Shown here piece after piece: positions 10,066-10,821 of a stretch of 64,000 nt of DNA. Position 1 is the first letter of the stretch; each line of letters opens with the position of its first letter. The translations under genes and the position numbers were made by a program. The notes below the pieces were generated by a model. That model was not told the origin of the DNA and made no database searches. It was given only the letters and a program-made list of their open reading frames with translations. Source of the stretch: Lama guanicoe (taxonomy: Eukaryota); contig MU055008.1 of NCBI GenBank assembly GCA_013239625.1, forward strand, positions 5,517,401 through 5,581,400, written 5' to 3'.

Positions 10066-10821
10066 ATGCCTCACTTTGCAAACCCTCTTTTAAGAAACAT
10101 CATTATCAGAAGCCTATTTGACAGCATCAAGAGGAAGCAATGTCTCCAATATTTGAAAACCCTGAGAACACTGCAATATGATGGCTTTACAACCATATAT
10201 CTTGGGGAAACCGATCTCCCTGAAAGTCTTGTAACTGGGGAAGATTTCAGCGACGGCTATTTCATGCCAACTCCGACGTGGTGTATTGTGCACGCCGGTG
10301 GTGGTCAAGGATGGGTGCCTTGGAAATATCGGATGTTCCTAAGGGATGAGTTATGCGTCAGACAGGAAGACAGCCTCTTCTTTGAGTTCTGTGATGTGGT
10401 GAAAAAGACCTATGGGAAGTGTGTCATTGTGGTCAAAGAGCGGAGGCAGCAGGCTGAGCTGAGGCCAGCGGAAGACAAAGAGTCGGAGGCCCAAGCCCAC
10501 GTCCCATCAGTCATCAACTTAACGAGCATCGTATGTTGCCCTGAGGTGGCCAAGTCCTATGGCCATAAACTACTCTCTCTGCCTTCCCCTTACGATTATC
10601 TGAACCCTTTAGACTCTGCCTGGTCTTCTCTGAAATGGTTTATCATCAATAACAGAAAGGAGTTTTGTTTGCAGTCCATTGACAATGTCTATTCTTACCA
10701 GTATATACTCTTCAGTGATTTAATTAGCAAAGGGATTGAAAGAATAAACCCAAGCAAATGGAAAACACTGACTAACAAAGTGCGAAGATGGGAGAACTAC
10801 TATCTTGGTAAATTTTCCTAA
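10066..10821 (+). CDS. FAM243A: FAM243A / C21orf140, 251 aa, single coding exon; transposase-like (see findings)
   Basis: Intact 251-aa ORF with GCCACCATG Kozak context and an in-frame TGA at 10054-10056. Length, sequence ([16 protein letters not shown]...[10 protein letters not shown]) and position tail-to-tail with SMIM11 next to KCNE2 match C21orf140 as I recall it. Confidence 0.92.

What the first reader, a model, noticed from the sequence alone, without database searches (positions are those of the whole stretch)
10066..10821. FAM243A/C21orf140 looks like a domesticated, catalytically dead IS630/Tc1-mariner (DDE_3) transposase
Seen in the sequence, in this order: (1) [22 protein letters not shown], aa 28-49; (2) [14 protein letters not shown], aa 72-85; (3) KCVIVVKE, aa 118-125; (4) [35 protein letters not shown], aa 159-193; (5) a helical tail [23 protein letters not shown]. 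Established knowledge: eukaryotic IS630/Tc1-type transposases with a long D-E spacer carry blocks of the form 'YL..I...R..G..I.YLDET', 'L.IVHAG...GFVP', 'NSVIVMDNASYH' and 'D.LA...GH.VLRLPPYH..LNPIE..W...K..V', in this same order. Mapping gives the triad positions as G47 (10204-10206), K124 (10435-10437) and D183 (10612-10614). Both aspartates are lost and the glutamate is D. The 58-residue spacer is longer than DD34E and closer to long-spacer groups such as Sailor/DD82E. The intronless CDS fits a transposon origin. Inference: a conserved host gene built from an inactive RNase H-like transposase core, perhaps a nucleic-acid-binding scaffold or a transposase inhibitor. I know the gene only as 'uncharacterised' but cannot exclude that the link has been noted before.
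Basis: partly seen in the sequence, partly recalled or inferred. Interest (0 to 1): 0.88.

Follow-up and report, generated by a model that had tools for sequence, protein, structure and literature searches.

The report
FAM243A: a domesticated, dead transposase core
The 251-codon gene at 10066-10821 is the FAM243A/C21orf140 orthologue, an old vertebrate host gene made from the catalytic domain of a Sailor-like Tc1/mariner-type transposase that has lost its DNA-binding domain and its catalytic residues; the DDE kinship was already listed in a 2024 paper, so this sharpens a known link.

Summary

- **Profile search.** A profile of 24 tetrapod orthologues, run against 1.84 billion proteins, found only FAM243 orthologues and then proteins of which all 16 scanned carry DDE_3 (E 1.6e-9 to 1e-3).
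- **Profile against profile.** Probability 99.6%, E 1.2e-23. The reverse search also works (64 bits).
- **Fold.** An AF2 model (pLDDT 82) matches SETMAR, Mos1 and Sleeping Beauty catalytic domains at Z 13-14. Retroviral integrases reach only 9.5 or less.
- **Triad.** G47, K124 and D183 align with the transposases' D, D and E. None of about 100 orthologues keeps all three.
- **Nearest transposases.** They are insect or metagenomic, with DD81-83E or DD90E spacing and Sailor-type motifs. Sailor is a superfamily reported as absent from vertebrates.
- **Age.** The gene occurs in sharks, rays, herring, catfish, coelacanth and tetrapods, and its tree follows the species tree. This points to one domestication before jawed vertebrates radiated.

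Prior art exists. PMC11377751 lists C21ORF140 as a putative "DDE superfamily endonuclease", and Pfam 38.1's C21orf140-like family co-occurs with DDE_3 in an arthropod protein cluster.

What is added here is the dead triad, the Sailor-like affinity and the age. The function is still only inferred.

The parts
10066..10821 (+). Complete single-exon CDS of FAM243A/C21orf140 (251 aa plus stop)
   Evidence: M1 is invariant and length is 244-274 aa in nearly all complete orthologues
10060..10069 (+). Kozak-type start context gccaccATGc
   Evidence: read directly from the sequence
10135..10815 (+). Residues 24-250: the part homologous to the whole catalytic domain of Sailor-like DDE_3 transposases (aligned to residues 159-410 of the 439-aa transposase P0176)
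   Evidence: hhalign prob 99.6%, E 1.2e-23, 214 columns; VIA-align Z 13-14 to SETMAR, Mos1 and SB over model residues about 3-251
10204..10206 (+). G47, at the position of the first catalytic Asp (YLGET against transposase YLDET)
   Evidence: Gly in 87 of 88 aligned orthologues; only coelacanth has Asp
10435..10437 (+). K124, at the position of the second catalytic Asp; the transposase DNAxYH motif is replaced by KERRQQ
   Evidence: K or R in tetrapods, coelacanth and most cartilaginous fishes (Ser in two of the rays); D or N in teleosts
10612..10614 (+). D183, at the position of the catalytic Glu (LNPLD..W...K against LNPIE..W...K)
   Evidence: D 80, E 5, N 2, Y 1 of 88; E in all cartilaginous fishes
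10621..10635 (+). W186 to K190 on the helix after position 183; the Lys lies 7 residues after the E position. These are the only two columns invariant in all 110 aligned FAM243 and transposase sequences
10447..10503 (+). Residues 128-146: charged, poorly conserved, predicted disordered remnant of the long D-E spacer (58 aa here against 81-83 or 90 in the nearest transposases)
   Evidence: pLDDT below 50; gaps and variability; spacers
10666..10707 (+). Residues 201-214: FAM243-specific insertion of about 11 aa, predicted as a beta-hairpin, absent from the transposases
   Evidence: gap in hhalign and hmmsearch alignments; strands E201-205 and E210-214

Best explanation
The ORF is a conserved host gene (FAM243A/C21orf140). 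It descends from the catalytic (RNase H-like, DDE_3) domain of a long-spacer, Sailor-like member of the IS630/Tc1-mariner group. It was captured once, before the radiation of jawed vertebrates, and inherited vertically since. It kept the whole catalytic-domain fold, including the C-terminal helices. It lost the N-terminal DNA-binding domain of about 150-230 aa, about 24 aa of the D-E spacer, the DNAxYH motif and the metal-binding triad (D,D,E became G,K/R,D in tetrapods). It therefore cannot carry out canonical two-metal DNA cleavage or strand transfer. Inferred, not shown: it works as a non-catalytic binding module. The former active-site groove is still constrained: H76, G82, G166-H167, P181, W186 and K190 are shared with the active transposases, and the protein is mildly basic (pI 8.5-9.5). 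New invariant Trp/Cys surface positions (W72, W83, W86, C109, C119, W242) and a new hairpin have been added. My best guess is that it binds a nucleic-acid end or structure, or a protein partner, and does not cut DNA.
For: Shown:
- Profile of 24 orthologues against 1.84e9 proteins: after the FAM243 orthologues, the 40 weaker hits include all 16 that I scanned, and every one carries PF13358 DDE_3.
- hhalign of FAM243-only against transposase-only profiles: 99.6%, E 1.2e-23. The reciprocal hmmsearch hits all 88 orthologues, and the window protein scores 64 bits.
- The transposase profile itself hits Sleeping Beauty 5cr4 at 5e-8.
- The AF2 model has pLDDT 81.9 and pTM 0.79. The Foldseek top 11 are all SETMAR, SB or Mos1. 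VIA-align gives Z 13.1-14.2, rmsd 3.2-4.3 A over 175-193 residues, against 9.5 or less for integrases.
- Residue mapping and its variation among lineages: cartilaginous fishes G/(R,K,S)/E, coelacanth D/R/D, teleosts G/(D,N)/(N,Y), tetrapods G/(K,R)/D.
- The nearest transposases have DD81-83E or DD90E spacing and the motifs IIYLDET, VIVMDNA and HCELNPIEL. These are the published Sailor consensus (PMC8533490).
- FAM243 is one clade (100/100) whose branching follows the species tree.
- KCNE2 lies 22 kb away.
- RNA-seq runs from several studies hold the stretch.

Established knowledge: replacing any residue of the DDE/D triad abolishes catalysis in Tc1/mariner transposases and retroviral integrases.
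Against: - The single protein gives no hit to the local Pfam DDE_3 model, and the FAM243 profile alone does not reach solved transposases by sequence.
- The confident AF2 model used an alignment that included transposases. The orthologue-only model was poor (pLDDT 47), although it showed the same order of strands and helices.
- I had no model coordinates, so I could not measure whether positions 47, 124 and 183 lie together.
- Membership of Sailor proper is not shown: there were no reference ITm sequences for a rooted tree, and the spacer of 58 is outside Sailor's 78-111.
- Nothing here shows what the protein binds. Acidic residues next to the lost ones (E48; E/D125 in 71 of 88) leave a small chance of a non-canonical metal site.
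Confidence: 0.85

Rival explanations
1. FAM243A is still an active DDE-type endonuclease, as the label 'putative nuclease candidate' in PMC11377751 implies. It would use a shifted or alternative set of acidic residues (E48, E/D125, D183).
For: PMC11377751 lists it among 'DDE superfamily endonucleases'. E48 is nearly invariant, position 125 is E or D in 71 of 88 orthologues, and D/E183, W186 and K190 are retained.
Against: Two of the three canonical carboxylates are Gly and Lys/Arg. The DNAxYH motif is gone. Position 125 is G, P or S in other orthologues. No lineage keeps the triad, and the three positions differ between lineages while their neighbours are invariant. E48 is also conserved next to the catalytic Asp in the active transposases, so it is not a replacement for it.
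Confidence: 0.06
2. It is a truncated transposase kept as a dominant-negative inhibitor of related active transposases.
For: It lacks the DNA-binding domain but keeps the catalytic-domain surfaces that transposase subunits use to contact each other. Truncated transposases acting as repressors are known in other systems (established knowledge).
Against: Sailor elements are reported absent from vertebrates (PMC8533490), yet the gene has been kept across all jawed-vertebrate classes. A target-less inhibitor would not stay under selection. The self-association test gave no verdict.
Confidence: 0.04
3. The similarity is chance or convergence, or the ORF is not a real gene.
For: No direct Pfam or PDB sequence hit for the single protein. 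Weak chance-level hits to SH3 and PsaF.
Against: Whole-library E-values to 1.6e-9, hhalign E 1.2e-23 and a reciprocal hit. The match is collinear over 214 columns and includes all signature blocks. An intact ORF of about 250 aa occurs in about 100 species from sharks to mammals, and 60 columns are invariant among the 24 aligned tetrapod orthologues.
Confidence: 0.01

Closest known systems
Sailor (DD82E) transposases of the IS630-Tc1-mariner group (PMC8533490)
   Same: They are the best non-orthologue hits in the whole protein library. The blocks are collinear: (I/V)YL[D>G]ET, HAGxxxGWVP, VIV(M/V)[D>K], GHxxLxLPxxxxxLNP(I/L)[E>D]xxWxxxK, and the C-terminal WK...V...E..Y helices. Both have a D-E spacer longer than Tc1/mariner's 34-41.
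   Different: FAM243 has no DNA-binding domain and no intact triad. Its spacer is 53-72 (58 here), not 78-111. It has an extra hairpin of about 11 aa. It is single-copy, vertically inherited and found in vertebrates, where Sailor is reported absent. TIRs and the TATA duplication were not examined.
SETMAR/Metnase transposase domain (Hsmar1 mariner, domesticated in primates); Mos1; Sleeping Beauty
   Same: These are the best structural matches (Z 13-14.2). SETMAR is the textbook case of a Tc1/mariner-type transposase turned into a host gene with an altered triad (DDN).
   Different: SETMAR keeps its DNA-binding domain and two of three catalytic residues, retains partial DNA-cleavage activity, is fused to a SET domain and is young (anthropoid primates). 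FAM243 is a bare catalytic core with two of three residues lost. It is as old as jawed vertebrates and derives from a different (long-spacer) lineage. Sequence identity to these structures is only 6-15%.
Pogo-derived host genes (CENPB, TIGD1-7, JRK, POGK, POGZ) and GVQW3
   Same: They are domesticated IS630/Tc1-mariner-group transposases of vertebrates, several with degenerate DDE domains. GVQW3 is listed beside C21ORF140 in PMC11377751.
   Different: Those come from the DDxD/pogo lineage (Pfam DDE_1) and mostly keep the CENP-B-type DNA-binding domains that carry their function. FAM243 keeps only the DDE_3-type catalytic core.
Pfam 38.1 PF27940 'C21orf140-like'
   Same: The window protein's orthologues all carry it. 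An arthropod cluster carries both PF13358 (97%) and PF27940 (62%).
   Different: It is a family label only. The local Pfam copy does not hold it, and I could not read its description or clan.

Membership tests
FAM243 / C21orf140-like (PF27940) | Full-length orthology to C21orf140 proteins | tested here: met
   150 hits; best 89% identity over 100% of the length; all carry precomputed PF27940. Atlas top clusters score 0.97-0.98.
IS630/Tc1-mariner transposases (Pfam DDE_3, PF13358) | Significant sequence homology to the DDE_3 catalytic domain | tested here: met
   By profile: E to 1.6e-9; all 16 scanned hits carry DDE_3; E 1.2e-23; reciprocal. Not met by the single sequence against the local Pfam model. 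Coelacanth P0122 scores only E 0.0073. Chondrichthyan-like P0227 (unnamed source) carries precomputed PF13358.
IS630/Tc1-mariner transposases (Pfam DDE_3, PF13358) | RNase H-like fold with the Tc1/mariner-type C-terminal helical part | tested here: met
   AF2 pLDDT 81.9. Foldseek top hits are SETMAR, SB and Mos1. VIA Z 13.1-14.2, against 9.5 or less for integrases. Caveat: the alignment used for folding contained transposases.
IS630/Tc1-mariner transposases (Pfam DDE_3, PF13358) | Intact DDE/DDD catalytic triad | tested here: not met
   G47, K124 and D183 in the window. No orthologue of about 100 has all three.
IS630/Tc1-mariner transposases (Pfam DDE_3, PF13358) | N-terminal paired-like helix-turn-helix DNA-binding domain | tested here: not met
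   FAM243 residue 24 aligns to residue 159 of a 439-aa transposase. Only about 23 residues precede the homologous part, and M1 is invariant.
IS630/Tc1-mariner transposases (Pfam DDE_3, PF13358) | Mobile element: terminal inverted repeats, TA/TATA duplication, multiple copies | not tested
   The gene tree follows the species tree, as expected of a vertically inherited host gene. The flanks were not searched for repeats; none is expected after this much time.
Sailor (DD82E) superfamily | D-E spacer of 78-111 residues (mostly 82-83) | tested here: not met
   FAM243 has 58 here and 53-72 in fishes. The nearest transposases have 81-83 or 90. The criterion is from PMC8533490.
Sailor (DD82E) superfamily | Consensus blocks I/VVYLDET, VIIMDNA, HCELNPIEL (against Tc1/mariner VLWSDES, IFQQDNA/D, SPDLNPIEN) | tested here: inconclusive
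   Block 1 fits Sailor apart from D>G (TIYLGET). Blocks 2 and 3 are degenerate (VIVVKER; YDYLNPLDS). The nearest transposases fit all three.
Sailor (DD82E) superfamily | Falls inside the Sailor clade in a rooted tree with other ITm families | not testable with these tools
   No reference Tc1, mariner, pogo, Gambol, IS630 or named Sailor sequences were obtainable by reference. The unrooted tree only shows FAM243 as one clade apart from the transposases.
Domesticated transposase (host gene) | Single orthologous gene inherited vertically over a long time | tested here: met
   FAM243 clade 100/100, branching ray / teleosts / coelacanth / salamander / mammals + sauropsids. Found in sharks, rays, herring, catfish, coelacanth, newt and axolotl.
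Domesticated transposase (host gene) | Purifying selection (dN/dS well below 1) | not tested
Indirect evidence only: intact ORFs, and 60 columns invariant among the 24 aligned tetrapod orthologues.
Domesticated transposase (host gene) | Expressed | tested here: inconclusive
   Nine runs on record as RNA, from several studies (reproductive-system samples among them), hold a third to three quarters of the sampled words. The gene is differentially expressed in duck muscle (PMC12754469).

The most novel reading that the evidence does not exclude
FAM243 is the only surviving vertebrate descendant of the Sailor superfamily, which is otherwise reported absent from vertebrates. It was captured in the ancestor of jawed vertebrates as a bare catalytic core that was already, or soon became, inactive. 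It has since been kept as a non-catalytic reader of a nucleic-acid end or structure, using the old active-site groove (the W186/K190 helix, with a Lys/Arg sitting where the second metal-binding Asp was).
Probability: 0.3. Interest if true: 0.6.

Novelty: new member of a known kind. Interest (0 to 1): 0.45.

Why it matters
FAM243A/C21orf140 is a conserved human chromosome-21 gene with no known function. Showing that it is a transposase catalytic core with a destroyed active site corrects the one published label ('putative nuclease'). It adds an old, DNA-binding-domain-less case to the short list of domesticated Tc1/mariner-group genes. It gives Sailor-type elements a vertebrate footprint. It also gives concrete experiments: binding assays, not nuclease assays, and mutants of the retained groove. 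The kinship at superfamily level was already in a paper and in Pfam, so this is a refinement and not a discovery.

Tried and rejected
- **Pfam scan of the single protein:** no family, even at E 10. The local copy lacks PF27940.
- **Sequence searches of solved structures:** the protein alone and the orthologue profile gave only chance-level hits, to PsaF, ABL SH3 (a shared GWVP..Y string) and HACE1, at E 0.08 or worse. Rejected as chance.
- **First AF2 run (24 orthologues only):** pLDDT 47, not used for fold search.
- **The look-up of encoding contigs:** There is therefore no orthologous DNA, no dN/dS, no synteny check in fishes, and no look at TIRs or duplications of the insect elements.
- **Read laying:** (ARAGORN) did annotate the whole window locally.
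- **Self-association test (two copies):** no verdict. The score was 0.63, but one unrelated control scored 0.52. This is not evidence either way.
- **Rfam scan of the window:** only a tRNA match elsewhere.
- **Literature:** 14 papers name the gene. Only PMC11377751 bears on its nature. A search for DDE_3 + domesticated + vertebrate gave only ciliate papers.

Full report
**1. The observation**

The window holds one long ORF at 10066..10821 on the + strand, 251 codons. Its start codon sits in a strong Kozak context, gccaccATGc. The three codons it named are correctly placed: G47 at 10204-10206, K124 at 10435-10437 and D183 at 10612-10614.

The protein is the orthologue of FAM243A/C21orf140. A search gave 150 relatives, the best 89% identical (black rhinoceros) and about 82% to apes (Pongo), so the window is from a non-human mammal. 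The KCNE2 coding exon lies 22 kb away at 32742..33131 (-). From my own knowledge, that fits the human 21q22 neighbourhood.

**2. Is it related to DDE transposases?**

The single protein gives nothing against the local Pfam copy or against the sequences of solved structures. The orthologue profile also does not reach solved transposases. The similarity is therefore remote, but it is real:

- I built a profile of 24 tetrapod orthologues (A1) and ran it with HMMER against every one of 1.84 billion representative proteins. It found 58 proteins at E 0.001 or better. The first 18 are FAM243 orthologues or fragments of them.
- The remaining 40 have whole-library E-values from 1.6e-9 to 1e-3. I scanned 16 of these against Pfam, and every one carries PF13358 DDE_3.
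- A profile-profile comparison of the FAM243-only alignment with a transposase-only alignment (A3) gives probability 99.6% and E 1.2e-23. It covers 214 collinear columns, FAM243 residues 24-250 against residues 159-410 of a 439-aa transposase.
- In the reverse direction, the transposase-only profile hits all 88 FAM243 orthologues (median 61 bits). The window protein scores 64 bits, E 1.1e-12 when scaled to 1.84e9 sequences.
- The same transposase profile hits the Sleeping Beauty catalytic domain (5cr4) at 5e-8. That ties the chain to classical Tc1/mariner enzymes.

**3. The fold**

With orthologues alone AlphaFold2 was unsure (pLDDT 47). It already gave the strand-helix order expected of an RNase H-like domain.

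With a 110-sequence alignment that adds fish orthologues and the transposases (A2), the model reaches pLDDT 81.9 and pTM 0.79. Only residues 128-146 are disordered.

Foldseek against the PDB puts SETMAR/Metnase, Sleeping Beauty and Mos1 catalytic domains in all the top places (E about 1e-4). VIA-align gives them Z 13.1-14.2 (rmsd 3.2-4.3 A over 175-193 residues). That is clearly above retroviral integrases, at Z 9.5 or less.

Two caveats apply. The alignment used for folding contained transposases. I also had no coordinates, so I could not measure distances between the three positions.

**4. The triad**

- YLGET lies on Y(L/T/V)DET, so G47 is at the first Asp.
- [10 protein letters not shown] lies on (S/C)VIVMDNAxYH, so K124 is at the second Asp, and the DNAxYH motif is gone.
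- [12 protein letters not shown] lies on LNPIELxWxxxK, so D183 is at the Glu.

State counts over 88 orthologues:

| Position | States |
|---|---|
| 47 | G 87, D 1 (coelacanth) |
| 124 | K 52, R 30, S 2, D 2, N 1, M 1 |
| 183 | D 80, E 5, N 2, Y 1 |

With more fishes added the states by lineage are:

| Lineage | Position 47 | Position 124 | Position 183 |
|---|---|---|---|
| Cartilaginous fishes | G | R, K or S | E |
| Coelacanth | D | R | D |
| Herring and catfishes | G | D or N | N or Y |
| Tetrapods | G | K or R | D |

No orthologue has all three. The three positions drift between lineages while neighbouring residues are invariant, which is what one expects once catalysis is no longer selected. 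It is established that replacing any triad residue abolishes catalysis in Tc1/mariner transposases and retroviral integrases. I therefore take the protein to be dead for canonical two-metal chemistry.

**5. What was kept and what is new**

- **Shared with the transposases** (at least 95% of FAM243 and at least 80% of transposases): E48, P70, H76, A77, G82, G166, H167, P173, P181, W186, K190, L219, W232, V239, E243, Y246. W186 and K190, the Lys seven residues after the E position, are the only columns invariant in all 110 sequences.
- **FAM243-specific invariants** include G47, W72, W83, W86, C109, Y116-G117, C119 and W242.
- **An insertion** of about 11 residues, predicted as a hairpin (201-214), is absent from the transposases.
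- **The protein is mildly basic**, pI 8.5-9.5.
- **The N-terminal DNA-binding domain** of the transposases (about 150-230 residues) has no counterpart. Only about 23 residues precede the homologous part, and M1 is invariant.

**6. Which transposases?**

Every hit that spans the triad has a long second spacer, 81-83 residues, or 90 in P0137 and P0153. Those with a name come from insects: Tenebrio, Zophobas, Cydia, Aricia, Nesidiocoris and Cacopsylla. Their blocks (IIYLDETW, SVIVMDNASYH, HCELNPIELAW) equal the published consensus of the Sailor (DD82E) superfamily. That paper contrasts them with Tc1/mariner's VLWSDES, IFQQDNA/D and SPDLNPIEN (PMC8533490).

The same paper reports Sailor in 206 invertebrate species and states that it is absent from vertebrates.

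FAM243's own spacer (58 here, 53-72 in fishes) is shorter than Sailor's range of 78-111 but longer than Tc1/mariner's 34-41. The hhalign match shows it as the long spacer with about 24 residues deleted.

I could not root a tree with reference families. 'Sailor-like' is therefore an affinity, not a demonstrated membership.

**7. Age and inheritance**

Orthologues occur in the following groups:

- sharks, rays, skates and sawfish;
- herring and two catfishes;
- coelacanth;
- newt and axolotl;
- reptiles, birds, marsupials and placentals.

In a maximum-likelihood tree FAM243 is one clade (100/100), separated from the transposases by a long branch. Inside the clade the order is ray, teleosts, coelacanth, salamander, then mammals and sauropsids, which follows the species tree.

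This is the pattern of one capture before jawed vertebrates radiated, followed by vertical descent. Basic 124 is shared by cartilaginous fishes, coelacanth and tetrapods, and Gly47 by all lineages but coelacanth. By parsimony, these two losses were already present in their common ancestor.

The conservation of an intact ORF of about 250 codons, with 60 columns invariant among the 24 aligned tetrapod orthologues, is the indirect evidence for selection.

**8. Expression**

Nine runs on record as RNA, from several studies, hold a third to three quarters of the sampled words of the CDS. Reproductive-system samples are among them.

Transcript ends, strand and level are therefore unknown.

A duck muscle study lists the gene as strongly down-regulated between day 1 and day 80 (log2 change -5.23; PMC12754469).

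**9. How it probably works**

Shown: it is a bare, inactive transposase catalytic core that has been conserved since before jawed vertebrates radiated.

Inferred: it acts by binding, not by cutting. The constraint on the old groove (H76, G82, G166-H167, P181, W186, K190) and the mild basic charge favour a nucleic-acid end or structure as the ligand. The new invariant Trp/Cys positions and the hairpin could instead form a protein-binding surface.

I put about 0.85 on the origin-and-inactivation statement. Given that, I put roughly 0.35 on nucleic-acid binding, about 0.35 on a protein scaffold, and the rest on something else.

The rivals fare as follows:

- **A residual nuclease using E48, E/D125 and D183** is unlikely, because position 125 is not conserved outside tetrapods and E48 is also present beside the catalytic Asp in active enzymes.
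- **A transposase inhibitor** is unlikely, because its targets are reported absent from vertebrates.
- **Self-association:** the test gave no verdict.

**10. What is known already**

[quoted passage not shown] It lists the gene again in a supplementary table and gives no further analysis.
- Pfam 38.1 has a family PF27940 'C21orf140-like'. An arthropod cluster carries both DDE_3 (97%) and PF27940 (62%).
- One chondrichthyan-like orthologue from an unnamed source has a precomputed DDE_3 hit.
- NCBI/UniProt pipelines even call insect transposase fragments 'C21orf140 homolog'.

The superfamily link is therefore not new. I found no paper that describes the dead triad, the missing DNA-binding domain, the Sailor-like affinity or the jawed-vertebrate age.

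**11. Verdict**

This is a new, old and unusually reduced member of a known kind, domesticated Tc1/mariner-group transposases. Its superfamily kinship is already on record, and its published 'nuclease' label is probably wrong. Interest is moderate (0.45).

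Noticed in passing
window 32742-33131 (-): Complete KCNE2 (MiRP1) coding exon. The ORF starts at a TTG, and the Met of [13 protein letters not shown]... lies six codons in. It places the window in the KCNE2-FAM243A neighbourhood known from human 21q22. An earlier scan note (s1-860916) concerns KCNE2 exon 1 at 38749-38766.
   Followed up: partly
window 35208-35280 (-): tRNA-Ala (AGC) called by ARAGORN and Rfam, at a modest 44 bits. It could be a real tRNA gene, a pseudogene or the head of a tRNA-derived SINE.
   Followed up: no
window about 3045-3185, 56918-57100, 62742-63005: Runs of N (masked or gaps), seen as X in ORF translations.
   Followed up: no
No letters of them were sent to any database search afterwards.
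   Followed up: no
proteins P0142 (Zophobas morio), P0174/P0219 (Cacopsylla melanoneura): Insect Sailor-like transposase fragments with an intact D..E are named 'uncharacterized protein C21orf140 homolog' in public records. This is a naming artefact that runs the homology backwards.
   Followed up: partly
proteins P0148, P0152 (Nesidiocoris), P0162 (Aricia): Three long (451-512 aa) Sailor-like proteins (two named from insects, one from an unnamed source) also have Gly at the first catalytic Asp (YLGETC / YIGETS), as FAM243 does. In the tree they fall among the transposases, so this looks like independent inactivation, or possibly other domestications.
   Followed up: no
protein P0122/P0201 (Latimeria): Coelacanth FAM243 alone has Asp at position 47 (YLDET) but Arg at 124. 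This is either a one-step reversal from Gly or a sign that Gly47 arose more than once.
   Followed up: partly
proteins P0125/P0205 (Clupea), P0234 (Hemibagrus), P0235 (Bagarius), P0130, P0233: Among teleosts only herring and catfishes (Otomorpha), plus two unnamed sequences, turned up. They are fast-evolving (24-34% identity to the ray protein; long branches). The gene may have been lost in most other teleosts; absence was not tested.
   Followed up: no
protein P0137 (570 aa, metagenome 'transposase', DD90E): This is the best transposase hit (E 1.6e-9). It shares YGKCC before the second Asp and a Cys in the preceding helix with FAM243, residues otherwise specific to FAM243. Its source organism is unknown.
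   Followed up: no
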